Virus record (IMG/VR): IMGVR_UViG_3300004463_000226
Span: 1 to 64,000 of that record
DNA length: 64,000 nucleotides
Reading direction: 5' to 3' (one strand)
The position numbers and the translations under genes are program-made. Of this stretch, positions 22,292 to 63,380 are shown in pieces. Numbering within the stretch: the first letter of the stretch is position 1; each line of letters opens with the position of its first letter. The notes below the pieces were generated by a model. It ran no database searches. It was not told the origin of the DNA and saw only the letters and a list, made by a program, of their open reading frames with translations.

Positions 22292-22353
22292 GAATAATAT
22301 CTCCTTTACGTATACAATTATTATTGATTTTTGAATATATCATCTATATCCAC

Positions 22354-22869
22354 TTATATAATATATAACTCTTCTTTGTGAAATTGCGATTTTCTCTTAT
22401 ATTCACAAAAGTAGTATACTATACCAACTTTCTTACATTCCTTACCTTTTTGTCTAGATTGCAATTCCCACTCATCCCACTTGATATCAGGGAAGAATGT
22501 ATCACCTATAAATGATTCATATATCTTTGTGATATACATCTTCTCGACATATGGTAAGAATAGTTTATATATTTCTTCTCCTCCAAAGATATATACTCTT
22601 TCATCTTTAGTAGCTTCAAGTACTTCTTCAACAGAATGAAATATTTCACAATTTTTAGCGGTATAATCTATGTTCCGAGTAAGAATAATATTACGTCTAT
22701 TGGGAAGTGCTTTCCCAATAGACTCAAAGTTTCTTCTACCCATAACAATAGTACCACCGCTTGTTGTAACCTTCACATGTTGCAGATCTTCTGGAAGATC
22801 CCACGGAAGATTATTTTTATAACCAATTACTTGATTATGATCAAATGCAACAATTAGTGATAATGGCAT
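22354..22869 (-). CDS. dfrA: Dihydrofolate reductase
   Basis: LIVA...IG..N.LPW.LPEDL, MGRRNFESIGKALPNRRNIILT, IFGG..IY, GDTFFP. Confidence 0.97.
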   Translation of the reverse strand: MPLSLIVAFDHNQVIGYKNNLPWDLPEDLQHVKVTTSGGTIVMGRRNFESIGKALPNRRNIILTRNIDYTAKNCEIFHSVEEVLEATKDERVYIFGGEEIYKLFLPYVEKMYITKIYESFIGDTFFPDIKWDEWELQSRQKGKECKKVGIVYYFCEYKRKSQFHKEELYII

Positions 22870-22870
22870 T

Positions 22871-23887
22871 TTAATTCTCCTTTAATACTTCTAGTTGCTC
22901 ACCCACAGACTTCTTCCAGTCAATTCGTAGATTATCCTCATAAAAGTGGTGTGTTATTAGTGTAGGGAATTCACTTCCTGAGGCAGACCGATGTCCGCCG
23001 CCACCAAATAAACGTTTAGAAATTTCACCTACATGTATATGGTCTTTTACTGTACGATATGAAACCTTACCAGCGCCCATGTTTACAATAACAACAAAAT
23101 CAATATCAGGATTATTTTTACACAGGGTGTTACCTAGAATTGAATGATGCTGTTCAGCATATACTACCCCAACATTATATACTGTAGCACCATCGTTTAC
23201 GATAGTTTTGAACATCTGTTTTTCCTTGTGCTCAATAAAACGCTGCTCACGCTTAGCTTCAGTATCGACTAAATATCTTTCATTTGTTGATAATACTGGA
23301 TCAAGGTCATTAGTGAATCTTTCAATAAAATCATCATGTCCAATAATCCACATTAGATCACTTAACATTTTAGGATGCTGTATACCTAGCTTATTCCAGT
23401 CCCATGTATCATACAGACGAACCACCTCAGCAAATTTACCAAGATCTCCTTTTTCAGATGGTGTTAATACAGGATTTGGATTAACAAGTAAACGCATCAT
23501 TTCACTAGTGCCGCTTGTTTTAGTACCGAAGCAAGTAGAAAATACACTAGCCCATTCATACTCATTCAACCAAGATGCTGTTTCATGATGATCGATTAGA
23601 TTTAAAGTAACTCCTGTGCGGCTACAGAAATAATCTAGCATTTCAGCTGTATCAGGTTGAACTGAAATATCCGTAATAAGGATTCTTTCGAATGGAAAGA
23701 CTTCATCTGTTGGATTACCGTCTTCATCAACATACTTAGAAAGAAACTCTTTAATTTTGTTATCAATATTATCATATCCACAAATATGATGTAAAGTGAA
23801 CTGGAAAATGTTCTTTGCCATTGTAATACATCCAATACCATCTAAATCATTATGACTAAAATGTACAACTTCTTCTAAAACCTTCAT
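22871..23887 (-). CDS. DHH/DHHA1 phosphoesterase (nanoRNase NrnB-like)
   Basis: SHNDLDG, ITDIS, IDHH, YDTWDW, VSYR, GGGH..ASG. Confidence 0.9.
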   Translation of the reverse strand: MKVLEEVVHFSHNDLDGIGCITMAKNIFQFTLHHICGYDNIDNKIKEFLSKYVDEDGNPTDEVFPFERILITDISVQPDTAEMLDYFCSRTGVTLNLIDHHETASWLNEYEWASVFSTCFGTKTSGTSEMMRLLVNPNPVLTPSEKGDLGKFAEVVRLYDTWDWNKLGIQHPKMLSDLMWIIGHDDFIERFTNDLDPVLSTNERYLVDTEAKREQRFIEHKEKQMFKTIVNDGATVYNVGVVYAEQHHSILGNTLCKNNPDIDFVVIVNMGAGKVSYRTVKDHIHVGEISKRLFGGGGHRSASGSEFPTLITHHFYEDNLRIDWKKSVGEQLEVLKEN

Positions 23888-23986
23888 TTGGTTTCTCCTC
23901 CAATATAAATATTTTTTCTATCTATATAATTATGTTAAAAGGCAAATAAAAATACACTAATACTTAAGTATTAGTGTATTCTGTAA

Positions 23987-24316
23987 TCATTTTCTATTAA
24001 GGACATTTAATCCTTGTTCAATTCCAGCAGCAACTTCATCTTCGGAAACTTTAATTCCTTTAGTTGCTAAGATTTGAACCGCTTTCTCAATAGCCCAGTC
24101 ACGTTTAACTCGTCCTTGAGAACCTTTCATTTCAACTTCAGCATAAGCAATCACACTATCAATTACATGATTGATAACTGGAAGTTGATTTTTCTTCTTA
24201 AGTTGGTCAAGAAACTTATAGGCTTTTGCTATTAATGCACTTACAGCAGCGCCCACTAAAATCGTGATAACTTCAGAAGCTAGTTGAGTTACAAGACTCA
24301 TAAGATGTTCTTGCAT
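23987..24316 (-). CDS. Phage holin, LL-H-like
   Basis: Single N-terminal TM, then V.YAE...G..K...A.E......GI.VS..E...IE pattern; late-type promoter upstream; hairpin at 23951-23980 downstream. Confidence 0.65.
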   Translation of the reverse strand: MQEHLMSLVTQLASEVITILVGAAVSALIAKAYKFLDQLKKKNQLPVINHVIDSVIAYAEVEMKGSQGRVKRDWAIEKAVQILATKGIKVSEDEVAAGIEQGLNVLNRK

Positions 24317-24348
24317 GTTGATCTCTCCTTCTCAATATTATAGTAATA

Positions 24349-29378: not shown

Positions 29379-31700
29379 CTATTGCTCTCTAATCAAACGA
29401 ATTGTATCTCTCAATACAGGTTTAGCCATAGTTTTATCTTTATACTTCATCTTAGAGCTAATAGATTTAAATTCCTGTATTAAAGAGTCTCTCAATTCCT
29501 CTTTGTGAGTAATTTTTGTAGTAATCTTTTTACCGACAAATCTATACATCATGTTCAATGTATTTTCATTAAAACCTAGAGTCTTAGATATTAACTCTAC
29601 ATCATGTATCATCTTTATCATATTATAATGACGACTATTCATCAGATAAAGAATATTGAATGATGAAAGATCTGTTGTATATGACTTAAAAAATCTAACT
29701 AAAGTCATAACTGCATTGAGCATTACGTTATTAGAATCATTTACTACGTAAAGATATTGGAGATCTTTTATAGCTCCATTTATTCTATATAGAATATGAT
29801 CTATGTGCTCAATTATATCATTTTCATCAACAGTCTCTACGAATGTTGATAGTAATGGATCATCATCCTCTAAATATTCAAGGAAGGTTGTAGCAATAGT
29901 ACCATCTTGTTTTTGAAATAATGCTTCTTGATGTTGTGTAACCATAAGAGTATCATGTAATTTTTTATATGCATGATATTCTTCAATATTCTGAGTATTA
30001 CCTAACCTTTCGACAATAAAATCATTAAGTTGTCTTATATTTGAAAACATTGAATTTATTTCGCTAATATCATCTATTTTCAAATCAAGAATCCATGATA
30101 ACATACGTTTGTCTAAATTAGGATTATTATTGATTTCATTCTTAATTAGAGTGAAATCTGCATAAAAATTAAATCCCATTACAGATAATATCTGTGTCGG
30201 TGATGATATTATATTACCTACCATTTTATTCTTCTTAGATATCAATGCACACATAAGTACAACAACGTTAAAGATAGGAATTTCCCGTTTATCAAACAGT
30301 TTAGGTAACTGTATAGTTACTGTACCTAGTTCATCTTTCTTATCAATTAACATTCTGAATATATAAGCCACTTCGAATAACATCTCAGTCATCTTATACA
30401 TAATATTCATATTGAGATACTTTGTCTCGACATAGTTATATTCAGAATCATAGAGAACCTTTTGTAATTCTTCGTCCTCATCCCACCAGAATGGATCGTT
30501 CTGAACTACCTGTTCATAAGTTAGCTTATTATTAATATCAGCGAGAGCTAGTGCAATATTTCTCTCACGAAGTTCTACCGTTTGGAAATATAACTCATAC
30601 ATAGCCTCATTATCTGGCACAGTAACAGTATCTCCATTGTCATCGATAATGGTCTTCGTTGCAAATATAGGACTATCATTGGAATCCATACGATGTTCTT
30701 TGATAAGGAAATACTTAAATATCTGGATGCGTTCGAATCCTAATATGTTACAAATATCATAGAGAACTTTATCCGTTGATTTGTAATGAAGTAAACTATT
30801 CATATTACGAACCAATGCTCTTTGATAATCTATGGGAAGATCTGCAATAAATGGTACATTATATGATTCCATAAGCATCTTAATAGAACCTAGGTCATAG
30901 AAGTCCCTTTGAATACCATTTTTAAATGAATTTGTTATCATACGTTGGATAGTCATGACCATAATCATCATTGCAATAAAATTATCATACAGGTCATATC
31001 TAGCAGAGAAGTCTTTATTATGAATAACAGTCATAAAGTATTCTCGACATTGTTCGTACATATTATTGAACTCATCGTAAAATGTCTCTGATACGTCTTT
31101 TGTCATTGCTAGGATAGCAAAGTTCCTAGAAGTTCTAGCTCGAAGAATATCTACCTTATTAGTACCTAAATAGTTAAGATACTTCTTAGAAGGATATTTC
31201 GCTCGAAGCTCATCCAGATATCCACGTTTCTCTAACCTAAGAATAGCTTCTTCATCTAATTGATGTACTGCTAGATCAGGATCTAAACCCAATAAAGTAT
31301 ATGTCTCGGGATCTAAAAAAACAAAATCTAAATCCTCATTATCAGGTAATCCTTGAAGAGATCTATAATAGTTATTAGTCTCCTCATAAGCACTTATAAT
31401 AAGTTTCCGTTGCTCAAGTACAATAGCTTCCCTAAACTCAATTGGTATTAGATCTTTACGAGTTGCATATAATTGGGCTAACTGTGTGTCTAGAATACCA
31501 GCATTGATTATTGCAAGTGGATTAAAGGTTTGATAAGTATGGAAAGTATCTTCCATATTTCTTGCAGATATGTATCTATCTGCATTCCTAAGGGAATCCA
31601 TGGTTTCGTTCTGTTTAGCCTTCTTTTCATATTTAATAACGACTGTATTCATAACTGTTCGCAAGTCGTTAAAAAATGTATCTAAAAAATACATGGACAC
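29379..31700 (-). CDS. Large putative structural (baseplate wedge-like) protein
   Basis: 773 aa with YEETNNYYRSL.GLP and LLHYKST..V..I..ILG motifs; adjacent to another structural gene. Confidence 0.5.
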   Translation of the reverse strand: MSMYFLDTFFNDLRTVMNTVVIKYEKKAKQNETMDSLRNADRYISARNMEDTFHTYQTFNPLAIINAGILDTQLAQLYATRKDLIPIEFREAIVLEQRKLIISAYEETNNYYRSLQGLPDNEDLDFVFLDPETYTLLGLDPDLAVHQLDEEAILRLEKRGYLDELRAKYPSKKYLNYLGTNKVDILRARTSRNFAILAMTKDVSETFYDEFNNMYEQCREYFMTVIHNKDFSARYDLYDNFIAMMIMVMTIQRMITNSFKNGIQRDFYDLGSIKMLMESYNVPFIADLPIDYQRALVRNMNSLLHYKSTDKVLYDICNILGFERIQIFKYFLIKEHRMDSNDSPIFATKTIIDDNGDTVTVPDNEAMYELYFQTVELRERNIALALADINNKLTYEQVVQNDPFWWDEDEELQKVLYDSEYNYVETKYLNMNIMYKMTEMLFEVAYIFRMLIDKKDELGTVTIQLPKLFDKREIPIFNVVVLMCALISKKNKMVGNIISSPTQILSVMGFNFYADFTLIKNEINNNPNLDKRMLSWILDLKIDDISEINSMFSNIRQLNDFIVERLGNTQNIEEYHAYKKLHDTLMVTQHQEALFQKQDGTIATTFLEYLEDDDPLLSTFVETVDENDIIEHIDHILYRINGAIKDLQYLYVVNDSNNVMLNAVMTLVRFFKSYTTDLSSFNILYLMNSRHYNMIKMIHDVELISKTLGFNENTLNMMYRFVGKKITTKITHKEELRDSLIQEFKSISSKMKYKDKTMAKPVLRDTIRLIREQ

Positions 31701-32880: not shown

Positions 32881-33123
32881 TTACTCTTCATACAATTCGT
32901 AAGTGCTTTCAAACACATGTGGCTTACAAGGGTAACGTTCGCCATCTAATCCTGTGATAACGTAATCATCTTCATCAATAAATGCTTTACCCTGATGAGT
33001 ATTAATATATGGTTTTACAGGATGATTGCTTCTTTCATCAAAGATTTTCTCGAATCCATCCTCCATACCTCTCTCATAAACTTCAGCTTTAATAGGAAAC
33101 CGCTTCTTTACATATAAAGGCAT
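32881..33123 (-). CDS. Conserved small phage protein (GE.YPCKP..F..TY family)
   Basis: YVKK..PI.A...I.T..G....DYVITG.DGERYPCKPHVFESTYE. Confidence 0.7.
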   Translation of the reverse strand: MPLYVKKRFPIKAEVYERGMEDGFEKIFDERSNHPVKPYINTHQGKAFIDEDDYVITGLDGERYPCKPHVFESTYELYEE

Positions 33124-33136
33124 AATTTTACCTCCT

Positions 33137-33409
33137 TTAATATATAATTTTTTGAAGTTCTTCTAGGCTGTTAGCTGAATAACATGAAACAATGTAAATT
33201 GTATTCGAGTGTTTATGAACAAGCTCATCATCATATGTCTTACACCAATAATCTAATTTAGGTATAAAATTTGCAGTTTCATTAATAATAACTTCATCTT
33301 TGGGAAATCCTTCCATTCTTACAACAATAGCAAAAAATTTAAAATCTTTCACTAGAGCAGCCTTGACATGCTCTGTTAAAAGCTGTTTCCTAGTCTTTCT
33401 TTCAGACAT
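33137..33409 (-). CDS. Conserved Bacillus phage hypothetical protein
   Basis: True start MSERK (GGAGG RBS); EVIIN...NF..KLDY...YD..L motif. Confidence 0.6.
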   Translation of the reverse strand: MSERKTRKQLLTEHVKAALVKDFKFFAIVVRMEGFPKDEVIINETANFIPKLDYWCKTYDDELVHKHSNTIYIVSCYSANSLEELQKIIY

Positions 33410-33420
33410 GGTAATTCCTC

Positions 33421-33825
33421 CTATATATAATATGATACTGCTAATGAAATAATAAGAATACGAAGTAAATGGAATGTTTGATCTATTTCTATGAGTACAA
33501 AAAACGGTAACTCTTCGATAACAAACCATTTATTACGCATAATTTTCTCTTCAAAAAATGTCTTCCACCAAATAACAGGCTTTCTAGTATCGACAATCAT
33601 ATGCTCAACAAATGTACCTAGAAATATGATTGCTGCTACGGTGTAGCTGACCAAAGGTACTACAAAACAAAAAGTAACTAATGAATATATTAGGCAATGT
33701 CTAAACCGATGTTTAAATGATTTGGCTTTGTTTGCTGCATCAGCATCAGATTGAAGAGGATAGTCCCCTATCTTATGTGCAACAAATTGAACTATAAATA
33801 ATGCACAAAAATGTAATAAGTCCAT
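33421..33825 (-). CDS. DUF3307-family membrane protein
   Basis: AH..GDY.LQ, H...Y, H..VD and DQ.FH motifs with TM helices. Confidence 0.8.
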   Translation of the reverse strand: MDLLHFCALFIVQFVAHKIGDYPLQSDADAANKAKSFKHRFRHCLIYSLVTFCFVVPLVSYTVAAIIFLGTFVEHMIVDTRKPVIWWKTFFEEKIMRNKWFVIEELPFFVLIEIDQTFHLLRILIISLAVSYYI

Positions 33826-33933
33826 TAAAATTTCCTCCCCATGATTCTTGGTAATTTTGGTTTCTTTATTTCCTTAATACATCCACAATCTTTATTAATA
33901 TGTGGAGTTTCGAGTTTAATAATCCTTCTTGGT

Positions 33934-34272
33934 TCAATACGTTTCTTTAGCAAATTCAATCACCAACTGGATGATAGATGCAATACCTGCAATAGCTAAT
34001 GTAACAATTATAAGGTTCTGTGGGTCTATGTAGTAGATAAATGCTACGATTAAGGCACACCAAAATCCCATACACCAATGACAACTGAGTAGATATCCTA
34101 TTCTACCTTTAGGAATAAGATAAATTTCACCTGATGCTGTTATGGTATTCGTATCTTCCCTGAAAAATGGAGCTCTTAGCCCATCAAAAGCAGCGTCAAA
34201 CATAAATAGACGCATTAATCTGAAAGTAGCTAGAGACATAATAATTAAATCTGTAATAGTATAATAATGCAT
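33934..34272 (-). CDS. DUF1360-family membrane protein (sporulation protein YjcA-like)
   Basis: LATFRL.RL...D..F..LR.PF, G.LLSCHWCMGFW and LAIAG motifs. Confidence 0.8.
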   Translation of the reverse strand: MHYYTITDLIIMSLATFRLMRLFMFDAAFDGLRAPFFREDTNTITASGEIYLIPKGRIGYLLSCHWCMGFWCALIVAFIYYIDPQNLIIVTLAIAGIASIIQLVIEFAKETY

Positions 34273-34337
34273 GTTTCTCCCTCCTTTTTATATTAACTGT
34301 TTCCGTGATAATAAAAAACAAAAAAATAAACCTAGAC

Positions 34338-34436
34338 TTAATGTCTAGGTTTACCTTTCTCTTGTATTATAATATCATATAACCATGTTAAAGCTCCAGC
34401 CATTATTAAACAGAAGACAACTTTATTCCAGTCCAT
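34338..34436 (-). CDS. Small membrane peptide, 32 aa (MDWNKVVFCLIMAGALTWLYDIIIQEKGKPRH)
   Basis: GGGGT RBS; single hydrophobic helix; stop codon lies in a terminator hairpin at 34328-34353. Confidence 0.45.
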   Translation of the reverse strand: MDWNKVVFCLIMAGALTWLYDIIIQEKGKPRH

Positions 34437-34478
34437 TAACAATCTACCCCATTACCTTTTTTAAATGAAGCAGCTAAC

Positions 34479-34877
34479 TTATTCTTGAATAAGTTTCGGC
34501 GTGTGAGCACCAAATCCGATTTCTCTATCTGGATCATGTTCTTTTTTCTTTTTCTTCTTGAGATGATCAACGGCTTCTTTGACAACATTCCCAACCATCT
34601 CCCTTTCTATGTTAAAATTAGCGATCTTAAGTTTTAACTCTGGTGTAAATACCGTAACACGGAAATCACCTTCAAGTAGTTCATATACTCTATGTTTATG
34701 TACTACATCTTCGGTGGGAGGAATACCTGGTATCCCACGATTTTTTAATATAGTATAGAAATCACCATAGAAATTCATCTTCACTGATAAATCACTTGAT
34801 TCTACGTATAATACATCTTCGGTGAGAATAGTTGATTCCCCTACTACATATCCTGATACCTTGTTGAATTTACTCAT
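34479..34877 (-). CDS. Hypothetical protein (early)
   Basis: Early motif at 34919, leader box and GGAGGT RBS before MSKFN. Confidence 0.65.
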   Translation of the reverse strand: MSKFNKVSGYVVGESTILTEDVLYVESSDLSVKMNFYGDFYTILKNRGIPGIPPTEDVVHKHRVYELLEGDFRVTVFTPELKLKIANFNIEREMVGNVVKEAVDHLKKKKKKEHDPDREIGFGAHTPKLIQE

Positions 34878-34942
34878 AATAATTACCTCCAAATAAATTT
34901 ATTATTGATTACCTATTTATAATATATAATTAGTACCACTGA

Positions 34943-35701
34943 CTATACTAAAATAGAAATCAGTGGTACTACGTAGTTCATATAATTATAAGAGATATCA
35001 ATATTATTCTTTTCCTTAGTATATTGGAGTCCAACCTTCTCACCAAATAATCTTTCATGAATTTTAAATAATGATTGAGTATTCAGTTCCCTATAGTAGC
35101 CGATATTTAACTCTTTGTTTTTATAATAATAAGCAAAGTCTTTTATTAATTCTATAACTTTCTTTCTATCAGCTATCTCATTCATCTTAAAGAAGTTATA
35201 TAAGAAGTCTAGCATATACTCTTTATGCAGTTCTAACAAATCATCACCGATACCCTTAACATCAATAGTATCCTTATTATAGTAGAACTCATAGTTGTTA
35301 AGATAATAATATGAAGTATATATATTCTTTTCAGCAAAGAGTATATTATCAAACTCTAATTCAAAGCACCGCTTAGTTGTTATAATAGCGTCTTTCTTAA
35401 CAGATAATATATGGTCATCTTCTATATTATTATTTTCAAAAAACCATTTACGAACTTCCATGAATTTTTCATTGAGCTTCTTGACGAGAGTTCTATCTTG
35501 TCTTTGATACATTCCTATCTGAATTTGTCTTTGTTTCTTTCCCAGAGTTTCGAGATATCTTATCTTATCATCATCTAGAAGTTTATATTTCTTCATAATA
35601 TTAAATCCAGCGGATTGGATATCGTACTCAATTATTTCATTAGCGATTATGTACTCTACATCCTTATTGAGATAACTATGTTTCTTATACAATGTTGACA
35701 T
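34943..35701 (-). CDS. Small protein resembling a family B DNA polymerase palm domain
   Basis: IEYDIQSAG (motif A-like D..S) and SVKKDAII (motif C-like Asp) at a suitable spacing; only 252 aa. Confidence 0.4.
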   Translation of the reverse strand: MSTLYKKHSYLNKDVEYIIANEIIEYDIQSAGFNIMKKYKLLDDDKIRYLETLGKKQRQIQIGMYQRQDRTLVKKLNEKFMEVRKWFFENNNIEDDHILSVKKDAIITTKRCFELEFDNILFAEKNIYTSYYYLNNYEFYYNKDTIDVKGIGDDLLELHKEYMLDFLYNFFKMNEIADRKKVIELIKDFAYYYKNKELNIGYYRELNTQSLFKIHERLFGEKVGLQYTKEKNNIDISYNYMNYVVPLISILV

Positions 35702-36086
35702 ATTTTCTATCCCTTGACATATATAATGATTTTAGCACTGTCAACGAAATATGATATATTGCATATCTGGCTATGTCTAGGTTATTAGCATCTTTACCAT
35801 ATTTCTTTTTTACCCTAGCAAGGTCTATGTCATTAAATTTAGTAGATGATATTACAAGGTCAATCAGCATTTCAATTATCTCAGTATCATCATAATTAAC
35901 AAAATAATTATTAGCAAATATAGTAGCATATACATCTACGTGCTCTTCAGTCATCTCAACACAATTTGGTGATATGTCTCTACTAGAAAATTCCTTTACT
36001 GATAAGAATCTTGGATCTTGACCGATAGATGATTTAATAGTGTAACAAAAACTTCTCCAATATTCATAGTGTCCTACTATATTCAT
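35685..36086 (-). CDS. Hypothetical protein
   Basis: AGGAGGAG RBS before MNIVG. Confidence 0.6.
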   Translation of the reverse strand: MNIVGHYEYWRSFCYTIKSSIGQDPRFLSVKEFSSRDISPNCVEMTEEHVDVYATIFANNYFVNYDDTEIIEMLIDLVISSTKFNDIDLARVKKKYGKDANNLDIARYAIYHISLTVLKSLYMSRDRKYVNIV

Positions 36087-36131
36087 ATTTTTCTCCTCCT
36101 GTTGCAAAAAGGGTAGACTTATGTCTACCCT

Positions 36132-36560
36132 TTATTCTGAATATGTTTCATTCAATTCTCTATATATTACATCAGCAAAATCTTCTTGATCATCGCCGAA
36201 TATAATCTTGAAATCTGTTATTCCTGAGTCAACAATTCTACTATACTGCTCTTGTCTAGCTTCAGTACCAATACTCAGTGGTCTAACTGGTTTCTCTCTA
36301 TAAACCCATTCAATTTGATCATCATCTTCTATGGATGGGAACGCTTCTAAGTCCATCCACCAGTCATTTCCTACAACTTTTAAATCTGATGGTACTGCTA
36401 CAAGTCCTGCAAACCCAGCATCTAAGTTCTCTTCATCTTCAGCCATTGCACTGAACTCGTCCCAGGTTAACTCAATATCCTCTGTACCAATCCATACTAC
36501 ATCACTTACATCTTTACCATTGTCTGCTAATACATCTAATGTGTGTTCTAAGAAGTTCAT
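36132..36560 (-). CDS. Acidic conserved phage protein
   Basis: MNFL..T..VL..NGK...DV.WIG...DL.VVG.DWW pattern seen in many phages; terminator at 36110-36131. Confidence 0.65.
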   Translation of the reverse strand: MNFLEHTLDVLADNGKDVSDVVWIGTEDIELTWDEFSAMAEDEENLDAGFAGLVAVPSDLKVVGNDWWMDLEAFPSIEDDDQIEWVYREKPVRPLSIGTEARQEQYSRIVDSGITDFKIIFGDDQEDFADVIYRELNETYSE

Positions 36561-37743: not shown

Positions 37744-37814
37744 TTTGCCGCTCTCCTTTAAATACTTATTATTGATTAGCTAGGTAGAGAGATAACCCTC
37801 TACCTAGAAATATC

Positions 37815-48456: not shown

Positions 48457-48509
48457 CATTCCTCCAAACAAATTATTATTGATTACACGTTTATAATATA
48501 TAAATGGCA

Positions 48510-54703: not shown

Positions 54704-54745
54704 TATCTATCACTCCCAATTTTTATTATTATTGATTAGTTGAAT

Positions 54746-55255
54746 CTATTTTATTTTCTTAGAGATTCTTGTCTTTTCCTTAGACACTGCCTCATTGAAA
54801 ATATTTACTAATTCTGGGAAGGATTGAAATGCAGCAACTATTGCTTGACCGTAAAGGAAATAGCAAAAGAAAGATATAGTCTCTCTACATAATTTATTAA
54901 AGAAGTCTTTAAATTCTCCTGTAAGTAAAGAATATGCCAATGCAAATATATTAGCCTCAACTTCAACACGTTGATATCTATACTTACGCATACCCCAATA
55001 ACTATCTTCATGATTGACATACTTGACATTTTTATATAGCCACATATTGCTTCTTTTATTTTGCCAAGCATGAAACATTTCATGAGAAAGTGTAGTTGAT
55101 CTACTATCCTTATAAACAAGAACCTGATCTATCATAGGAACATAGTAACCATTAGAAGATTCAGGTTTTCTAGTCTCAGGATCAAGGTACATGACACTCG
55201 TCTTAGACAATCTTAAAATCCTTCTTAAAATCTTTTCATGTGTTGTTAATTTCAT
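54746..55255 (-). CDS. Zincin-like metallopeptidase (HExxH)
   Basis: LSHEMFHAWQ...EVEAN; early motif at 55303. Confidence 0.65.
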   Translation of the reverse strand: MKLTTHEKILRRILRLSKTSVMYLDPETRKPESSNGYYVPMIDQVLVYKDSRSTTLSHEMFHAWQNKRSNMWLYKNVKYVNHEDSYWGMRKYRYQRVEVEANIFALAYSLLTGEFKDFFNKLCRETISFFCYFLYGQAIVAAFQSFPELVNIFNEAVSKEKTRISKKIK

Positions 55256-55365
55256 AATGCTTTACCCCCAAATTATTATTGATTATTATATTACTTACAA
55301 ATATAATATATACTTGACATTTTTCAAAAAACTAATTTTTTAAAATTTATCTTAAACATAAAATT

Positions 55366-55551: not shown

Positions 55552-55624
55552 AATGTTCATAGATTATAACATTTTCGTTCACCAACATTCTATTAAATCA
55601 TATTAGAATAAGAGGTGAACGAAA

Positions 55625-58600
55625 TTGCTATCTGTTTCGGAGATACCACACTTAAGGGTATATAAGCAAAGAACTATACTTCCTTTTGATAAAAAGGTTC
55701 AAAGTATGTATGGAATGGTATTTATCAATAACAATTCAATTGAGTCTGCTATTGAGTTAATGAATAGTCAGGCTATTTCTTCAGCTGGTAAATATCATAT
55801 CTATTATCTAGATAACCTTTATTCAGGAAGATTATTCGGTAAATCATACCGAGAAGTATTAAATAAAGAACGTGAAGAAATTTACGCTGAAGTTGAATCA
55901 AAGGCAAAGTTTATTAAGACAGAGAAATCTCTTATCTCAGTTAATAGCCGTAACATGTATTTTGATCTTCAGCACCACAATGATATTTTCTTTAGATTAG
56001 GAAATAGAACGTCTTCCTATATTAAGAAAGTGAATGATTATGCTTCTTTCCTTAAAGATATTATTAATGACGAAAGATTCTCTAAGTATAAAGAGAAGAT
56101 TGTCGCCATTAATGTCGATACATGGGTATCACAAGTTAGGAAGGAAATGACTAAAGGTTCTAAATTAGATAATCCTATTATGATTATCTATTATGCTCTT
56201 ATCAAATCTCTAGAGGAGTTTAAATCAATTGGTAATATTGATATTATTCTATACTCTGGAAGTTCAATGGTAAGAGTGAATCCTTCATTATGTGACAAGA
56301 AGTCGTACTATTTATATCGCCAAGAGGTTTCTAAACTTCATACTTCTATTACATTAGAAGATGAAGCCACCATTGAAAAGCAAGTTGAGCTCGATGCTGT
56401 TTATCAAAAAGTAGCCAAGAATTTCTCAGAGCACTTTAACTTCACTGGCGATGATGAAGAAGAAGGAGATGAGGAAATTGAGGAGAAAGCTAAAGAACGT
56501 CTTGAAGAGATTGTTGAAGAGGAGCCTGAAGAAGGTGTTACTGGTAGGGAACTAGAGAAGGAACTTACAAACAAGCTAATCAATGACGAGAAACTTCTCA
56601 AAGATGTTTACTCATATACTCAAGAGAAAAAGACTGGAAATTCAGCTGTTTCTTCAAAGCGCGACCAGGAACTAAGAGATAAACAAAAACAAATTAAAAT
56701 TGAAAATATGACTATTGAGGATATTAGAAATATTAACTCTAAGACAGTTAAACTGGACAAAGTTGATGTTTCTACTAAGGTTAAAACGACTAATAAGAAT
56801 GTTACGACAATTCATTATCCTCATTTTGAAAAGTCATATAATGAGCATTTATTGAAGAAGGATATGATTGATGTATTAATGCATCTTAATGACAGTTCAA
56901 TTCCTGTATTTGTCCGCAATATTGATGTTGTTGATAGTTCAGACGAATTGAACCATAAGGAAACTTATACTGTCGACTTAGAAGATGCTAATCGTGTTCG
57001 CCACCGTTTAAAATTCGATATGCCTAAATTTACTGACGATAAGTTCATGTACCTAAATGGTAATAAGAAACTCATTGTCAAGCAGCTTTATATGAAACCT
57101 ATTGTCAAAAATGGTCCAGATGAAGTTCAGGTTGTAGGTAGCTACAATAAGATCTTTATTCGCCGTCATGGAGGAAAGGTTTCTGCTAAAATAGAAAGAT
57201 TTAAAAAGGCTGTCTTAAAAGAAATAAAAGGTGTTGTTGTTAAATATGGCAATAATATTTCTACAAATAATGATTTTAAGACTACTATTGAGTACGATGA
57301 AATTTCTAAAGACATTACTTATATTCGTATAGGAGTTACGGAGTTTTACTTTAACCAAGAAGAAGTTCAGAAGTTGGTCAAAGACCGTAAGATAAAAATA
57401 AGTGATGATGAAATGTGTATTGGATTTATTAATAAAAAAGATCCAATCACTGTTAAATACGATACTCAACGCGTTGGTCCAGATATGGATATTGTTGACT
57501 TCATATTGTCAGTCGGTAAAGGTGAACTAGTTACTAGTTTCGATGCTGCAACAACAGGTAAGAAGTTTATCTATAGCCGCGCAACGGTTATGTCTAAACA
57601 AATCCCATTAGTTTTACTATTAGGGTACTTTGAAGGATTGAGTTCTGTTTTACGTAAAGCAGGCATTAAACATTACTTCACAGATACACGTCCTAAATTA
57701 GATGTTAATCAAGGTTCTATACAATTTGCAAATGGACATCTAGTATTTGATAGATATCCTTTTGAAAACTCATTACTAATGAATGCTTTTGCTGATATTC
57801 CAACCAGAGCATTCAACTATGAGGATTTTGATGAAAGAGAAGTTTACCTATCTATTTTTGACGTTATGTTTAAACAACGTAACTTAGGTAACGCTCTCTT
57901 GAACTACTATGAATTTATGATTGATCCTATTATGAAAGAAGTATTAGAGGATCTGAACTATCCAACAGGATTCGTAGAAGTTATGTTATATGCAAACGCA
58001 TTATTAACAGATAACTCATTTATTCGTGAGACTGATATGAGTAACTATCGTGTTCGTTCTAATGAGTTAATTAATGCATATCTATATAAAGCAATTGCTG
58101 ATGCTTATGGTTCTTATCGTGCAACAGCTAATAACAATAACCCAGTTAAAATCTCTATTCCACAAGATGCGATTACTAAGAAACTATTAATGTCTCAAAC
58201 TGTTGAAGACTATAGTATTCTTAACCCTATTGTTGAATTGGAGAAATCTCGGGCTATTACTCCTAAAGGACATTCTGGTATGAACTTGGATGATGCCTAT
58301 ACACAGGATAAACGTGCATTCGATCCATCTATGATGGGTATTATGGCAATGTCAACATCTCCTGATGCTAACTGTGGTATCGTTCGTGAGTTAACTCTAG
58401 AACCTAATATATTAAGTCCACGGGGTTATATTGACATCAAGAATGACAAACTTAAAGAATTAACTGATGCTAACTTGTTCTCTGCGGCAGAATTATTATC
58501 TCCTCTCGGAGTTTCAAGGGACGATAGTATCCGTACAGCAATGGCAACTAAACAATCAAAACACATTATCCCTATCGAGAAATCTTCTCCAGTTCTAATC

Positions 58601-59773
58601 TCAAATGGAGCTGAACAGATTATACATTATCATTTATCTAATGACTTTACAGTTGTTGCAAAGTATGATGGTAAAGTAGTGGAAGTCAATGAAGATGCAG
58701 GGGTAATGATTGTAGAATACAGCGATCCTAAAGGTATCCCACAGCCAGGTGGTGGAAAGAAAACAATACTCCATCAAGCTGTCGATATTAGTCCTAGAGT
58801 AGTGAAAAACGGTGCGGGTGGATTCTTCTTAACAAACCAACTTACAAGTAACTATAAAGTTGGTCAGAAGTTTAAGAAGAGTGATATTATTGCATCTGAT
58901 AAGAAATTCTTCACTAACTCAGATATTCATGGAAACCGATTCAATATCGGATCATTGCAGAAAGTAGCATGTATGAGTACGTTTGCAACTTATGAGGATT
59001 CTACATTTATTACTAAGAAACTGAGTGAAGAGATGGCTTCAGACATCGTAATGCAGAAAGCAATTACATTAGGTAAGAATGCCAATGTTGACTTTATTGT
59101 CAAAGTAGGTGACCATATTTCTGTAGGTGATGAATTAATCCGTTTCGAGTCTTCATTCGAAGACGATTCACTTAATAAGTTCTTAACACATATTGGAGAT
59201 GAGTTAAAAGAGGATATCAAGTCTCTAGGTAAAACTCCGATTAAATCAAAGTATACTGGAGAAGTTGTTGATATCAAAATATACTCTACAGTAGATCTAG
59301 ATGAGCTATCTCCAACATTGAGAAAGCTTGTTAGTGCATATTATGCTCAAATTAATAAAAAGAAAAAGACTATCGAGAAATACGATAAGTCTAATGAAGT
59401 TCATAAACTAGGAGTTCTATTAAATGAGCCTACTAGTAAGATTGAAACTAAAGATGGTAAGGTTAAAGGTATGGAAGTTGGGGAAGGTGTATTAATTGAG
59501 TTCTATATCAGCCATAAAGACATTATGGGTGTTGGTGATAAATTAACATTCTTCACAGCCTTAAAATCTATCATCGGGGATGTTATCCCAGAAGGTTACG
59601 AACCATATTCTCAATTCCGTCCTGAAGAAGAGATATCTTCATTCATAGCACCTGGAGCTGTATTAGCACGTATGACACCATCTATCTTGTTAACAATGTT
59701 TGGTAATAAGGTATTGGTTGAGCTTAAACGCCAATTACAGGAAATATATACAGGTAAACCATGGAAACCGTAA
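55625..59773 (+). CDS. Phage RNA polymerase beta subunit (large N-terminal/middle part), probably virion RNAP
   Basis: FMYLNG...Q, TSPDANCGIVRELT (TPEG.N.G equivalent), DD..RTAMATKQSKH, YEDS, GDKL...K and ARMT motifs. About 450-aa N-terminal extension; late-type promoter at 55584; size similar to phiKZ gp178-type subunits. Confidence 0.92.
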   Translation: MLSVSEIPHLRVYKQRTILPFDKKVQSMYGMVFINNNSIESAIELMNSQAISSAGKYHIYYLDNLYSGRLFGKSYREVLNKEREEIYAEVESKAKFIKTEKSLISVNSRNMYFDLQHHNDIFFRLGNRTSSYIKKVNDYASFLKDIINDERFSKYKEKIVAINVDTWVSQVRKEMTKGSKLDNPIMIIYYALIKSLEEFKSIGNIDIILYSGSSMVRVNPSLCDKKSYYLYRQEVSKLHTSITLEDEATIEKQVELDAVYQKVAKNFSEHFNFTGDDEEEGDEEIEEKAKERLEEIVEEEPEEGVTGRELEKELTNKLINDEKLLKDVYSYTQEKKTGNSAVSSKRDQELRDKQKQIKIENMTIEDIRNINSKTVKLDKVDVSTKVKTTNKNVTTIHYPHFEKSYNEHLLKKDMIDVLMHLNDSSIPVFVRNIDVVDSSDELNHKETYTVDLEDANRVRHRLKFDMPKFTDDKFMYLNGNKKLIVKQLYMKPIVKNGPDEVQVVGSYNKIFIRRHGGKVSAKIERFKKAVLKEIKGVVVKYGNNISTNNDFKTTIEYDEISKDITYIRIGVTEFYFNQEEVQKLVKDRKIKISDDEMCIGFINKKDPITVKYDTQRVGPDMDIVDFILSVGKGELVTSFDAATTGKKFIYSRATVMSKQIPLVLLLGYFEGLSSVLRKAGIKHYFTDTRPKLDVNQGSIQFANGHLVFDRYPFENSLLMNAFADIPTRAFNYEDFDEREVYLSIFDVMFKQRNLGNALLNYYEFMIDPIMKEVLEDLNYPTGFVEVMLYANALLTDNSFIRETDMSNYRVRSNELINAYLYKAIADAYGSYRATANNNNPVKISIPQDAITKKLLMSQTVEDYSILNPIVELEKSRAITPKGHSGMNLDDAYTQDKRAFDPSMMGIMAMSTSPDANCGIVRELTLEPNILSPRGYIDIKNDKLKELTDANLFSAAELLSPLGVSRDDSIRTAMATKQSKHIIPIEKSSPVLISNGAEQIIHYHLSNDFTVVAKYDGKVVEVNEDAGVMIVEYSDPKGIPQPGGGKKTILHQAVDISPRVVKNGAGGFFLTNQLTSNYKVGQKFKKSDIIASDKKFFTNSDIHGNRFNIGSLQKVACMSTFATYEDSTFITKKLSEEMASDIVMQKAITLGKNANVDFIVKVGDHISVGDELIRFESSFEDDSLNKFLTHIGDELKEDIKSLGKTPIKSKYTGEVVDIKIYSTVDLDELSPTLRKLVSAYYAQINKKKKTIEKYDKSNEVHKLGVLLNEPTSKIETKDGKVKGMEVGEGVLIEFYISHKDIMGVGDKLTFFTALKSIIGDVIPEGYEPYSQFRPEEEISSFIAPGAVLARMTPSILLTMFGNKVLVELKRQLQEIYTGKPWKP

Positions 59774-61500: not shown

Positions 61501-61563
61501 TTTTAAGACCTCCAATGTTTTATTACAAGAAAAATAAGGGCTGGAAGCTCCAACCCTTTTATA

Positions 61564-61968
61564 TTATTGAACAGCTTCTTCTTTTTTGATGCGGTGGAAA
61601 CAAGATACTCTATCTTTAGGAAACTCACGGGAACGTACATCTTTAATCAGTCCAGACACAGCTTCAACAATCAATCTCATTGGATCACGTTTAGTTGCTT
61701 TAGCAATCTTATACACACTACCGACATAAATTGTGACACTGTTAAGCTCTTTCAAAGTTTTACGACCAGTTTCAAGGTTTTCTGAGCAGCTACCATTAAA
61801 ACCAAAAGCAACAAGTCGCTCAGCATTTTCAACTTCACGAACAGCATAATGATTTGACTTAGCATTGATCTGAACAGCAGCATTATAAGTATCGAATACT
61901 TCTTTATCAGAATTTATCATTTGATGAGCTACCACTGCCATTTGTTTTAATTTTAAAGATTTGAACAT
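61564..61968 (-). CDS. Hypothetical protein (early)
   Basis: Early motif at 62026, leader box at 61987, AGGGGG RBS. Confidence 0.65.
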   Translation of the reverse strand: MFKSLKLKQMAVVAHQMINSDKEVFDTYNAAVQINAKSNHYAVREVENAERLVAFGFNGSCSENLETGRKTLKELNSVTIYVGSVYKIAKATKRDPMRLIVEAVSGLIKDVRSREFPKDRVSCFHRIKKEEAVQ

Positions 61969-62125
61969 AATTAATTCCCCCTAGGTTTATTATTGATTTT
62001 GAATATATTATTTATATTCACTATTATAATATATAGGTGATATTGCCGACTTTACGAATTAACATTTATTACCAGTAAAACAGTTATGTAAGAAATACAT
62101 ATCAATGAGAGGGGAACATACTAAA

Positions 62126-63073
62126 ATGGGTCAATTTGATAAAGAATGGAATAGGGTATTAGAGAATATTATGTTAAATGGAGTATGGCAGAAAGAAGAA
62201 CATGTCCGTGCTAAATGGGACGATGGTACTCCAGCTCCAGCTAAATTTGTTACAGGAGAAAAGATGGTATTTGATAATAGTGAAGCTCTAGTCCCAACGA
62301 CTAAAGAAATTAAACGTAAGAGTCCATTACGTGAACTAAAATGGATCTGGTTCCTTAAATCAAACGTGGTTCAGAAACTTCGTGATTTGGGAAGTAGTAT
62401 TTGGGATAAATGGGAAATTAAAGAAGGTGAATGGACAGGTACAATTGGTCCAGCTTACGGACATCAATTAGGTAAACAATGTAGGAAATTTCCAGTAGAA
62501 AAACTTCGCTGGGAACATCTACATCCTGAGCATGCTGTTGAGTTAAGACAAATGATAGAGGATGCTTTAGCACAAGGTTTTATTATTAAATATGTAATGC
62601 TGGATCAGGTAGACTTCCTCATCCAAGGTCTTCTTACTAACCCTGGTTCTCGCCGATATATTCTATCACTATGGGGTATTGAAGATCTTGACTACATGGC
62701 ACTAGAACCATGTGTATGGAAGACAGGGTGGCAATATGTTGATGGTAAAATTGATTTAATAACTGGTGTACGTTCAAATGATATCTGTGTAGGAAATCCT
62801 TTTAATGTGTTTCAATATCAGGTGTTATGGAATCTTATCTGTCAGGTAACAGGTCACACACCAGGGAAGATTCAATTTGATCTCGATAATCCACATATTT
62901 ATGACAGACACATTCCTGAGGCTATGAAACAGTTAGTGTATCCTCAAAAAACAGCTCCAAAACTTTGGATTAATCCTGATATTAAAAACTTTTATGACTT
63001 TAATCCAGATACTGATGTTAAATTGATTGACTATGAACACGGTCCAGACCGTTACTATGAGGTGGCTGAATAA
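62126..63073 (+). CDS. thyA: Thymidylate synthase (B. subtilis ThyA / phi3T ThyP3 type)
   Basis: M.QFDK, R.KW.DGTPA, IWD.W, IG.AYG.Q, SRR, ALEPCV (catalytic Cys), RSND...GNPFNVFQY, HIYDRH. Confidence 0.96.
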   Translation: MGQFDKEWNRVLENIMLNGVWQKEEHVRAKWDDGTPAPAKFVTGEKMVFDNSEALVPTTKEIKRKSPLRELKWIWFLKSNVVQKLRDLGSSIWDKWEIKEGEWTGTIGPAYGHQLGKQCRKFPVEKLRWEHLHPEHAVELRQMIEDALAQGFIIKYVMLDQVDFLIQGLLTNPGSRRYILSLWGIEDLDYMALEPCVWKTGWQYVDGKIDLITGVRSNDICVGNPFNVFQYQVLWNLICQVTGHTPGKIQFDLDNPHIYDRHIPEAMKQLVYPQKTAPKLWINPDIKNFYDFNPDTDVKLIDYEHGPDRYYEVAE

Positions 63074-63237
63074 TGAAATATATTCGTAGACTTATTCATA
63101 AGATGATTGTTGCATATTTATTAAAATCAGGTAAAACTTTCCACCACGGTAAGTATGAAGACGGTGGTCAGTATGTAGTATTAATGGATGAGTATCAATA
63201 TAACTTATTCACCAATTATGTAGATAACGGTTATTAA
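63073..63237 (+). CDS. Small hypothetical protein, 54 aa
   Basis: TAATG stop/start overlap with thyA; GAGGTGG RBS; terminator at 63242-63269. Confidence 0.6.
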   Translation: MKYIRRLIHKMIVAYLLKSGKTFHHGKYEDGGQYVVLMDEYQYNLFTNYVDNGY

Positions 63238-63380
63238 TTAAATAGAGTATAGGGAAACCTATACTCTATATTATTTGTTACTATAGGTGTAACAAATATG
63301 TAGAACGAATAAGTCAATTCATATATCGTTTATATATTATAAAGACGTGAATCAATAATAATTCATAGTCTATCAAGGAG

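What the first reader, a model, noticed from the sequence alone, without database searches (positions are those of the whole stretch)
22318..63361. Conserved 12-nt leader box AATCAATAATAA between early promoters and RBSs
Seen: exact copies on the coding strand at 22318, 34899, 37766, 48473, 54726, 55273, 61987 (-) and 63350 (+), all shortly upstream of an RBS. Six lie 8-30 nt downstream of a TATATATTAT motif; two (37766, 54726) lie inside operons with no adjacent motif. The variable spacing from the promoter argues for an RNA-level element. Inference: a translational enhancer, processing site, antitermination box or repressor site defining an early regulon that includes the RsfA-like regulator and the HExxH protease.
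Basis: seen in the sequence. Interest (0 to 1): 0.6.

Follow-up and report, generated by a model that had tools for sequence, protein, structure and literature searches.

The report
Early-gene leader box, jumbo phage
A 12-letter sequence sits, always on the coding strand, in the untranslated leader of about twenty early genes of an uncultured giant soil phage related to Bacillus phage AR9; it is a real, phage-specific signal, most likely read in the mRNA next to the ribosome-binding site, but its exact job is untested.

Summary
AATCAATAATAA occurs 9 times in the window (0.18 expected) and 21 times in the 234-kb genome. Seventeen copies lie on the sense strand within 40 nt upstream of a start codon. 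Four lie inside genes and none is antisense.

The genome is an AR9/PBS1-like jumbo phage with its own multisubunit RNA polymerases. TATATATTAT-N6-G is the early promoter mapped experimentally in AR9, and AACA-N6-TA, the AR9 late promoter, is also strongly enriched here. By the AR9 start rule the box lies in the transcribed leader. It starts at +3 or +4, or follows a short inverted repeat at the start site, or sits between cistrons of early operons. It is 0-23 nt from the Shine-Dalgarno sequence.

The box is not part of the promoter and is absent from 64 late leaders. It is predicted to be unstructured, shows no special pairing to Bacillus 16S rRNA and has no antisense partner in the phage. Downstream proteins are unrelated ORFans.

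Relatives share the promoter but lack the box; their early leaders are merely A/U-rich.

Best reading: an mRNA-level leader element that sets translation or stability of an early-gene subset. Whether a specific factor binds it is open. The closest analogues are the start-associated sequences of Cluster K mycobacteriophages and the undescribed early-UTR motif of AR9.

The parts
22318..22329 (-). Box copy; starts at about +23 of the predicted early transcript, 3 nt after the start-site inverted repeat. SD is 12 nt downstream; ATG at 22291 opens the 415-aa Myb-domain protein.
22333..22351 (-). Inverted repeat or weak 5'-terminal hairpin that begins at the predicted transcription start.
22358..22367 (-). 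Early (virion RNA polymerase type) promoter core TATATATTAT.
30124..30135 (-). Exact copy inside a 771-aa ORF with a virion-structural-protein match. It is on the sense strand and codes I-N-N. No SD or start follows; probably not a leader element.
34899..34910 (-). Box copy at +3 of the predicted early transcript (start G at 34912). SD is 8 nt downstream; ATG at 34877 (132 aa, ORFan).
34919..34928 (-). Early promoter core.
37766..37777 (-). Intercistronic box copy inside an early operon that starts at the promoter near 41371. It lies 2 nt after a strong hairpin. SD is 8 nt downstream; ATG at 37743 (219 aa).
37780..37807 (-). 12-bp hairpin (whole fold -20.8 kcal/mol, z -3.0) with no T run, directly upstream of the box.
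   Evidence: not listed among the terminator-like sites
48473..48484 (-). Box copy at +3 (start G at 48486). SD is 7 nt downstream; ATG at 48453 (107 aa, ORFan).
48493..48502 (-). Early promoter core.
54726..54737 (-). Intercistronic box copy, second gene of the operon. No promoter and no hairpin nearby. SD is 9 nt downstream; ATG at 54703 (148 aa).
55273..55284 (-). Box copy at about +13. SD is 3 nt downstream; ATG at 55255 (169 aa, HEMFH motif, no family match).
55303..55312 (-). Early promoter core.
61987..61998 (-). Box copy at about +22, 2 nt after the start-site inverted repeat. SD is 5 nt downstream; ATG at 61968 (134 aa, ORFan).
62001..62019 (-). Inverted repeat or weak 5'-terminal hairpin that begins at the predicted transcription start.
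62026..62035 (-). Early promoter core.
63331..63340 (+). Early promoter core. A late-type AACA-N6-TA motif also lies 88 nt upstream of the ATG.
63350..63361 (+). Box copy at +4 (start G at 63347). SD is 14 nt downstream; ATG at 63390 (85 aa, ORFan).

Best explanation
The box is a genuine cis element of the early transcription programme of an AR9-like jumbo phage, and it acts in the mRNA rather than in the DNA. Early genes are transcribed by the injected virion RNA polymerase from TATATATTAT-N6-G promoters. In about 40% of those transcripts, and in four internal cistrons of early operons, the leader carries AAUCAAUAAUAA as a G-free, unpaired stretch just 5' of the Shine-Dalgarno sequence. Often it sits 2-5 nt after the RNA's 5' end or after a hairpin. 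I take it to be a positive leader module. In this reading it is a single-stranded landing or standby site that raises translation initiation, and thereby ribosome protection of the 5' end, for a set of small early takeover genes competing with host mRNAs. Shown: its existence, strandedness, position, early-only distribution, independence from promoter and SD, lack of predicted structure, and lineage specificity. Inferred: the transcription start (by the AR9 rule), RNA-level action and the direction of the effect.
For: Enrichment and strand bias: 17 leader-sense copies against 0 antisense and 0 in other intergenic DNA; shuffled leaders give 0.03. Identity of the phage and its promoters: RNA polymerase beta-like and beta'-like genes are present. 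The early promoter equals the mapped AR9 promoter. AACA-N6-TA occurs 65 times in upstream regions against 6.7 expected. In all 13 promoter-linked copies the box lies downstream of the predicted start, at +3 to about +28. The box stays near the SD when extra sequence is inserted at the 5' end, and it recurs before internal cistrons that have no promoter. No position from +2 to +24 carries information when early promoters are aligned on the start site, so the box is not a promoter element. None of 64 late leaders has the box, and the core AATCAA is in 16 of 40 early leaders against 1 of 77 late leaders. Leaders fold weakly (-2 to -7 kcal/mol, z about 0) and the box is mostly unpaired. The box is exact while its flanks are at background identity (0.33-0.35) among 11 independent contexts, and the downstream proteins are unrelated. 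Early leaders of the relatives PBS1, LPJP1 and S6 are A/U-rich with AAUAA-type repeats in the same place, in S6 after 5' hairpins. The AR9 study also reports an unexplained motif in early 5' UTRs.
Against: There are no RNA data for this phage; only metagenomic DNA runs hold it. A purely compositional enhancer does not explain why 17 copies are exact, only 4 differ by one edit, and no enrichment remains at two edits, nor why one C is invariant. That sharpness suggests a sequence-specific partner, yet none was found. There is no special 16S pairing, no anti-box in the phage, and no phage Hfq, RegA, RegB, S1 or cold-shock domain. Most early genes lack the box, so it is not required for early expression. 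Close relatives that could show conservation at orthologous leaders are not in the collections searched.
Confidence: 0.4

Rival explanations
1. The box is the RNA recognition site of a sequence-specific trans-acting factor, either a phage or host protein or a host small RNA. That factor would co-ordinately repress or destabilise these roughly 20 early mRNAs once their products are no longer wanted, a post-transcriptional early shut-off in the manner of T4 RegA.
For: The definition of the box is very sharp: 17 exact copies, 4 at one edit, none enriched at two edits, and an invariant C. It is restricted to early leaders. It lies close to the SD, so a bound factor could block the 30S subunit. It is lineage-specific, as expected if it co-evolves with a phage factor. 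Its 3' eight bases match AAYAAYAA, the E. coli Hfq aptamer motif.
Against: The distance to the SD varies from 0 to 23 nt, which is awkward for steric repression. No recognisable RNA-binding regulator is encoded. No complementary RNA exists in the phage. Hfq specificity in the likely Bacillota host is, from my memory of the literature, different from that of E. coli. Twelve exact bases is long for a single-stranded-RNA-binding protein.
Confidence: 0.25
2. The box acts at the DNA or transcription level. It could be an asymmetric operator for a phage regulator, or a pause or antitermination signal for the virion RNA polymerase, comparable to lambda boxA/nut.
For: It lies just downstream of early start sites. 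Six copies sit beside an inverted repeat that overlaps the start site and could be an operator. A Myb-domain DNA-binding protein belongs to the box set.
Against: The box is never upstream of or across a promoter and is always on the sense strand. Four copies have no promoter within 260 nt. Two follow terminator-like hairpins with T runs rather than preceding them, and a third follows a hairpin without a T run. Two operons each carry two copies. The box is not palindromic. Its spacing from the promoter ranges from 8 to 28 nt.
Confidence: 0.12
3. The box is an endoribonuclease cleavage site that trims 5' hairpins or separates cistrons of early polycistronic RNAs.
For: Eleven of the 17 leader copies lie 2-5 nt after the predicted RNA 5' end or after a hairpin (five at +3 or +4, six after the start-site repeat), and two more lie 2-5 nt after an intercistronic hairpin; these distances were counted by eye from the printed contexts. 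The box is single-stranded and A/U-rich, as many RNase Y or E type sites are.
Against: Cleaving 3 nt from a primary 5' end serves no obvious purpose. No phage nuclease of a known kind such as RegB was found. No 5'-end data exist.
Confidence: 0.08
4. The box has no function of its own. It would be a hitch-hiking piece of promoter-leader cassettes that spread and homogenise by recombination, like the PeSL cassettes of T4-type phages.
For: Four loci (61987, 104274, 205887, 207666) share a nearly identical stretch running from promoter through repeat, box and SD, about 75 nt by my count from the printed contexts, in front of unrelated ORFans. Smaller families exist at 22318/106524, 55273/177964 and 34899/48473. 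Metagenome contigs of one leader lay on another leader, which shows the length of the shared stretch.
Against: Seven copies share nothing but the 12-mer, including the promoter-less intercistronic ones, and flank identity among family representatives is at background. A neutral remnant would decay, but near-variants are rare. In a soil relative of roughly 93-97% identity, the leader orthologous to 48473 still matches the reference through promoter and box with only two differences, while its flanks carry substitutions and a 2-nt insertion.
Confidence: 0.1

Closest known systems
Early 5'-UTR motif of Bacillus phage AR9 (Lavysh et al. 2017, PMC5312081, Fig. S3; function stated as unknown)
   Same: Both belong to the same phage group and share the early promoter (TATATATTAT-N6-G), the late promoter (AACA-N6-TA) and short early leaders of about 26-40 nt. 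In both, a motif is confined to early leaders.
   Different: The AR9 figure is not held as text, so its motif could not be read. In PBS1, a phage of the same group with the same promoter motif that I used as a stand-in for AR9 early leaders, those leaders start G-A-A/U-UAAA and contain no repeated exact 12-mer. The exact box occurs once in PBS1, a chance level.
Start-associated sequences (SAS and extended SAS) of Cluster K mycobacteriophages (Pope et al. 2011, PMC3203893)
   Same: Both are asymmetric repeats of 12-13 bp with 11-19 copies per genome. Both have one orientation, lie just upstream of start codons of non-structural genes from unrelated families, and are absent from the host. In both, part of the copies have an adjacent upstream inverted repeat, and the function is unknown but a role in translation initiation is suspected.
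   Different: SAS contains the Shine-Dalgarno core and lies 3-7 bp from the start codon. The box lies upstream of a separate SD and 12-38 nt from the start. The sequences and the host phyla are unrelated. SAS is conserved across a phage cluster, whereas the box is so far seen in a single lineage.
PeSL (promoter-early stem-loop) cassettes of T4-type phages (PMC2839356, PMC4122927)
   Same: Both are short conserved early-promoter and stem-loop cassettes that flank small ORFans in variable early regions. The repeat-bearing leaders here look like such cassettes.
   Different: PeSLs are terminator-plus-promoter units defined by their role in recombination between related genomes. Here the invariant part is a 12-mer in the transcribed leader that also occurs without promoter or stem-loop. 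Recombination could not be tested for lack of close relatives.
Hfq distal-face motif AAYAAYAA / (ARN)n (Lorenz et al. 2010, PMC2887942)
   Same: The last eight bases of the box, AAUAAUAA, match the motif exactly, and both lie in single-stranded leader RNA.
   Different: The motif was defined for E. coli Hfq. The host here is probably a Bacillota member. The first four bases, AAUC, are just as invariant but are not part of that motif. No phage Hfq was found.
rRNA-complementary translational enhancers (T7 gene 10 'epsilon' type; recalled from memory)
   Same: Both are short A/U-rich sequences upstream of the SD of highly expressed phage genes.
   Different: The box pairs with Bacillus 16S rRNA no better than 22-31% of shuffled boxes do.

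Membership tests
AR9-type early (virion RNA polymerase) transcription unit | Promoter TATATATTAT followed after 6 nt by the G (rarely A) start | tested here: met
   Thirteen of the 17 leader copies have it. Eleven carry the exact decamer, and 104274 and 207666 carry ACATATTAT. The rule comes from AR9 dRNA-seq and primer extension.
AR9-type early (virion RNA polymerase) transcription unit | The genome encodes phage multisubunit RNA polymerase subunits and uses a separate late promoter AACA-N6-TA | tested here: met
   Two beta-like genes and one beta'-like gene are present. AACA-N6-TA occurs 65 times against 6.7 expected in upstream regions. Sigma-70-like sites are not enriched, 42 against 45.
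AR9-type early (virion RNA polymerase) transcription unit | Transcripts appear early and independently of protein synthesis | not testable with these tools
   No RNA run holds this phage.
Cluster K start-associated sequence (SAS) | Asymmetric repeat in one orientation upstream of the starts of non-structural genes | tested here: met
   Seventeen sense and 0 antisense copies, all in early leaders.
Cluster K start-associated sequence (SAS) | Occupies the ribosome-binding-site position (contains AGGAG, 3-7 bp from the start); consensus GGGATAGGAGCCC | tested here: not met
   The box has no G. A separate SD follows 0-23 nt later and the start lies 12-38 nt away.
T4-type PeSL cassette | Conserved early promoter plus stem-loop unit repeated between unrelated small ORFs | tested here: inconclusive
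   This holds for 6 of the 17 copies. The others have the 12-mer alone.
T4-type PeSL cassette | Marks the end points of insertions, deletions or replacements between closely related genomes | not testable with these tools
   The nearest genomes found have 41-44% RNA polymerase identity.
Hfq (ARN)n / AAYAAYAA site | The sequence matches AAYAAYAA in unpaired RNA | tested here: met
   Box positions 5-12 are AAUAAUAA and are unpaired in predicted folds.
Hfq (ARN)n / AAYAAYAA site | An Hfq of that specificity is present and binds the site | not testable with these tools
   The host is unknown and no phage Hfq was found.
rRNA-complementary enhancer (epsilon type) | Complementarity to 16S rRNA beyond chance | tested here: not met
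   The best duplex is -5.4 kcal/mol, and 22-31% of shuffled boxes do as well, on three Bacillus 16S genes. The host genus is only presumed.
lambda-type nut/boxA antitermination site | One site per operon, downstream of the promoter and upstream of the terminators it overrides, with no link to start codons | tested here: not met
   Two operons each carry two copies. Two copies follow terminator-like hairpins with T runs. All copies lie within 23 nt of an SD.
T4 RegA / RegB target | A phage RegA or RegB homologue is present; the target overlaps the start codon (RegA) or is GGAG (RegB) | tested here: not met
   Six-frame searches with PF01818 and PF10715 found no match. The box overlaps neither the SD nor the start codon.
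Any curated RNA family (Rfam 15) | A match at gathering score | tested here: not met
   There were 0 matches in the window.

The most novel reading that the evidence does not exclude
The box is an address tag on early mRNAs. A so-far unrecognised sequence-specific factor would read the exact 12-mer and gather about 20 virion-polymerase transcripts into one post-transcriptional regulon, for example for privileged translation right after injection or for timed shut-off. The factor could be a virion-delivered or early phage protein among the many ORFans, or a host small RNA. That would be a new layer of gene control in AR9-like jumbo phages.
Probability: 0.25. Interest if true: 0.7.

Novelty: new variant of a known kind. 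Interest (0 to 1): 0.45.

Why it matters
Jumbo phages of the AR9/phiKZ kind run their own transcription, but almost nothing is known about how their early mRNAs are translated, protected or switched off. This phage offers an unusually clean handle. It has an exact 12-mer, separate from both promoter and Shine-Dalgarno sequence, in roughly 40% of early leaders and in none of the late ones.

If the box is a translational or stability module, it is a ready-made part for expression in Bacillota. It would also hint at what the unexplained AR9 early-UTR motif and the A/U-rich early leaders of Staphylococcus and Listeria jumbo phages do. If it is read by a specific factor, it defines a post-transcriptional regulon of host-takeover ORFans.

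The practical limits are that the phage is uncultured and its host unknown. Tests would therefore need synthetic leaders in a surrogate host or a cultured relative.

Tried and rejected
- **Late or middle promoter.** Rejected. The late motif AACA-N6-TA is separately enriched and differs from the box. In two leaders the box abuts the SD directly.
- **Initially transcribed part of the early promoter.** Rejected. Logos anchored on the start site carry no information after +1 in this phage or in four relatives.
- **Pairing with 16S rRNA.** No better than shuffled boxes.
- **Phage-encoded antisense or anti-box RNA.** No complement exists even with G-U pairs allowed. Antisense promoter motifs over the boxes are at chance level, 4 against about 5 expected.
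- **Conserved RNA structure involving the box.** None was found: z-scores are about 0 and there is no Rfam match. The start-site inverted repeat is weak and shows no covariation.
- **Phage homologues of Hfq, RegA, RegB, S1 or cold-shock domain.** None found.
- **A host-wide signal.** Bacillaceae genomes carry about 1 copy per Mb, close to the reversed-pattern control, against 90 per Mb in the phage.
- **Paralogy of the downstream genes as the cause of leader similarity.** No blastp hit at E 1e-3.
- **Close relatives for comparing orthologous leaders.**
  - The phage database gave no megablast hit.
  - IMG/VR and metagenome contigs gave only 41-44% RNA polymerase relatives.
  - The two IMG/VR contigs that matched a promoter-plus-box pattern are unrelated chance hits.
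- **RNA evidence.** No RNA run exists. Contigs from four metagenomes gave little variation over the boxes.
- **A G3/G4 early leader with a one-mismatch box at +1.** Its gene has no homologue at the box loci here.

Full report
**What the window is.** The window is the first 64 kb of a single-contig virus record. The record is 234,335 bp long with 33.7% G+C and direct terminal repeats, and it is estimated to be complete. It is held by many rhizosphere metagenome runs and one soil metagenome run, and by no RNA run.

The 1382-aa protein at 55625-59773 is an RNA polymerase beta-like subunit. Its best relatives, at 31-39% identity, are in Bacillus phages PBS1 and Goe21, Listeria phage LPJP1, Staphylococcus jumbo phages and Yersinia phiR1-37. 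A second beta-like gene near 197-198 kb and a beta'-like gene at 19112-20527 are also present. The phage is therefore an uncultured member of the AR9/PBS1-like jumbo phages, which carry their own multisubunit RNA polymerases. The nearest genomes in IMG/VR and in metagenome contigs have only 41-44% identity in this protein.

**The observation.** AATCAATAATAA occurs 9 times in the window against 0.18 expected. The ninth, at 30124, lies inside a gene. The genome holds 21 exact copies.

With a simple gene call (starts corrected), the 21 copies distribute as follows:

| Location | Exact copies |
|---|---|
| Sense strand, 60-nt zone upstream of a start codon (11.4 kb in all) | 17 |
| Antisense of that zone | 0 |
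| Other intergenic DNA | 0 |
| Coding sequence, sense | 4 |
| Coding sequence, antisense | 0 |

Shuffled leaders give 0.03 copies. Four more leader-sense sites differ by one edit: an inserted T (two sites), an inserted A, and a T-to-A change. At two edits there is no enrichment, 16 sense against 15 antisense. Among upstream regions, the box is one of only four enriched signals, together with the early promoter, the Shine-Dalgarno sequence and a gapped motif.

**The promoters.** In AR9, dRNA-seq and primer extension mapped 41 early promoters with the consensus AAATATATATTAT-(6N)-G+1. They are used by the injected virion polymerase. The same work mapped late promoters AACA-(6N)-T-A/G, used by the non-virion polymerase (PMC5312081).

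Both motifs are present here. TATATATTAT occurs 44 times in the genome, mostly 30-60 nt upstream of starts. AACA-N6-TA is the most enriched gapped motif, 65 against 6.7 expected, and typically sits 20-35 nt upstream of starts. Sigma-70-like sites are not enriched.

**Where the box sits in the transcript.** By that rule the 17 leader copies fall into four arrangements.

- Five begin at +3 or +4: 34899, 48473, 63350, 103568 and 223207. Three of the one-edit variants also begin at +3.
- Six follow a 7-9 bp A/T-rich inverted repeat that starts exactly at +1, with 2-5 nt between repeat and box: 22318, 61987, 104274, 106524, 205887 and 207666.
- Two follow a shared 11-13 nt stretch: 55273 and 177964.
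- Four lie between cistrons of early operons, with no early or late promoter motif within 260 nt.
  - 37766 lies 2 nt after a strong hairpin that has no T run.
  - 104858 and 184239 follow terminator-like hairpins with T runs.
  - 54726 has no hairpin nearby.

The Shine-Dalgarno sequence follows 0-23 nt after the box and the start codon 12-38 nt after it.

**What the box is not.**

- It is not part of the early promoter. When all early promoters are aligned on the start site, positions +2 to +24 carry almost no information, both here and in PBS1, LPJP1, S6 and the metagenomic relative G003.
- It is not the late promoter, which has a different sequence. None of the 64 late leaders carries the box. 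The core AATCAA is in 16 of 40 early leaders but in 1 of 77 late leaders.
- It is not a structured RNA. The leaders fold weakly with z-scores near 0, the box is mostly unpaired, and no Rfam family matches.
- It does not pair with Bacillus 16S rRNA better than shuffled boxes do.
- It has no complement elsewhere in the phage, even with G-U pairs allowed, and antisense promoters over it are at chance level.
- It is not a general Bacillaceae signal: those genomes have about 1 copy per Mb against 90 per Mb here.
- The proteins downstream are unrelated to one another and nearly all are ORFans. The exceptions are a Myb-domain protein and a weak M78-peptidase-like match outside the window.

**Selection or copying?** Some leaders are clearly copies of one cassette. 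Four loci share the whole stretch from promoter to start codon, and three smaller pairs exist. This resembles the PeSL cassettes of T4-type phages.

Seven copies, however, share only the 12-mer. Among 11 representatives of independent contexts, the 12 nt on either side are 33-35% identical, which is background, while the box is identical by selection of exact matches. The scarcity of near-variants argues that each base matters.

One soil metagenome holds a relative of roughly 93-97% identity, estimated from differences per aligned contig. Its counterpart of the 48473 leader still matches the reference through promoter and box with two differences. Its flanks carry three substitutions upstream, and a 2-nt insertion plus a substitution downstream. 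Its counterpart of the 104858 leader has a 2-nt deletion at the 3' edge of the box. This evidence is thin.

**Relatives.** PBS1, LPJP1, S6 and the two 260-kb metagenomic relatives all use TATATATTAT-N6-G. They have the exact box only 1-4 times per genome, at or near chance. None has a comparable repeated 12-mer in its leaders.

Their early leaders are nevertheless alike in kind. PBS1 leaders begin G-A-A/U-UAAA. LPJP1 leaders begin G-U-AAUAAAAUAAA. S6 leaders begin with diverse 5'-terminal hairpins followed by an AAUAAA-type stretch and the SD. The AR9 paper mentions an unexplained motif in early 5' UTRs, but the figure is not held as text. The box therefore looks like a sharpened, lineage-specific version of a family-wide A/U-rich early leader.

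**Mechanism.** The strict sense orientation points to action in the mRNA. So do the position, always inside the predicted transcript, the coupling to the Shine-Dalgarno sequence rather than to the promoter, the recurrence before internal cistrons, and the lack of dyad symmetry.

I favour a positive leader module (confidence 0.4). In this reading the box is an unpaired, G-free landing site beside the SD that raises initiation. In Firmicutes, where 5'-proximal ribosome binding and 5' hairpins are known stabilisers (general knowledge of B. subtilis mRNA decay, not tested here), it would also protect the 5' end.

The sharpness of the motif is the main argument for the chief rival, a site for a sequence-specific regulator (0.25), for which no candidate could be identified. 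DNA-level or antitermination roles (0.12), an RNase site (0.08) and a functionless cassette remnant (0.1) fit fewer of the facts.

**Comparison with known systems.** The nearest analogue in form is the start-associated sequence of Cluster K mycobacteriophages. It is an oriented 13-bp repeat before non-structural genes, partly accompanied by an upstream inverted repeat, and its function is still unknown. That element contains the SD itself, so the box is an analogue and not a member. The last eight bases of the box equal the E. coli Hfq aptamer motif AAYAAYAA. This is a lead only.

**Verdict.** The box is a real, early-specific element that is separate from promoter and SD and peculiar to this lineage. 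It belongs to a known but unexplained kind, the phage leader or start-associated repeats, so I rate it a new variant of a known kind with moderate interest.

Noticed in passing
whole genome; in the window e.g. 55583-55594 (+) upstream of the RNA polymerase beta-like gene, and 63290-63301 (+): AACA-N6-TA, the AR9 late (non-virion polymerase) promoter, is the most enriched gapped motif upstream of genes: 65 against 6.7 expected, usually 20-35 nt from the start. So the AR9 two-polymerase promoter grammar is conserved in this distant 33.7% G+C relative.
   Followed up: partly
window 22333-22351 (-) and 62001-62019 (-); genome 104246-104271, 106497-106521, 205858-205884, 207633-207660: Six early promoters have an A/T-rich inverted repeat (GTGAATATA-N5-TATATTCAC type) that starts exactly at the predicted +1. 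As RNA it is a weak 5'-terminal hairpin (-2.5 kcal/mol, no covariation). As DNA it could be an operator over the start site.
   Followed up: partly
Staphylococcus phage S6 (loci L050-L063), early leaders: Most predicted early transcripts of S6 begin at +1 with stable hairpins whose sequences differ from leader to leader. An AAUAAA-type stretch and the SD follow. This looks like a family habit of 5'-terminal stem-loops on early mRNAs.
   Followed up: no
window 30124-30135 (-); genome 152482, 175531, 229049: Four exact box copies lie inside genes, all on the sense strand, against 0.15 expected from codon shuffling. Three encode I-N-N in Asn-rich stretches. They may reflect local amino-acid bias or may be functional; this is undecided.
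   Followed up: partly
window 62105-63073 (+): A thymidylate-synthase-family gene (Pfam E 4e-57) has its best bacterial relatives in Bacillus haynesii and B. paralicheniformis (45-46%), which hints at the host. AR9 and PBS1 have deoxyuridine DNA and AR9 late promoter recognition uses template-strand dU, so a ThyA-like enzyme here raises the question of which base this phage carries: T, hydroxymethyl-U or U.
   Followed up: no
window 54746-55255 (-): A 169-aa early ORFan with an HEMFH motif at residue 58 has no Pfam or PHROG match. Calling it a protease rests on the motif alone.
   Followed up: partly
window 48466-48477 (+), antisense of the 48473 leader: The reverse complement of the box's 3' end plus the following TTTGTT forms AACAAATTATTA, a late-promoter-like motif that would start an antisense RNA inside the box. 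Antisense motifs over the boxes are at chance overall, so this is probably coincidence.
   Followed up: partly
window 21044-22291 (-): A box-linked 415-aa protein has an N-terminal Myb-like DNA-binding domain (Pfam 34.7 bits) and a coiled-coil C-terminal half. It is a candidate early regulator.
   Followed up: no
locus L083 (genome 101501-107400), run X12: A 2024 soil metagenome holds a relative of roughly 93-97% identity in short contigs. It is the only sign of a close relative and a possible source for comparing orthologous leaders.
   Followed up: partly
window 33000-42000: Terminator-like hairpins with T runs are enriched (10 against 2.3 expected) although the phage uses its own polymerases. 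Sigma-70-like promoters are not enriched (42 against 45).
   Followed up: no
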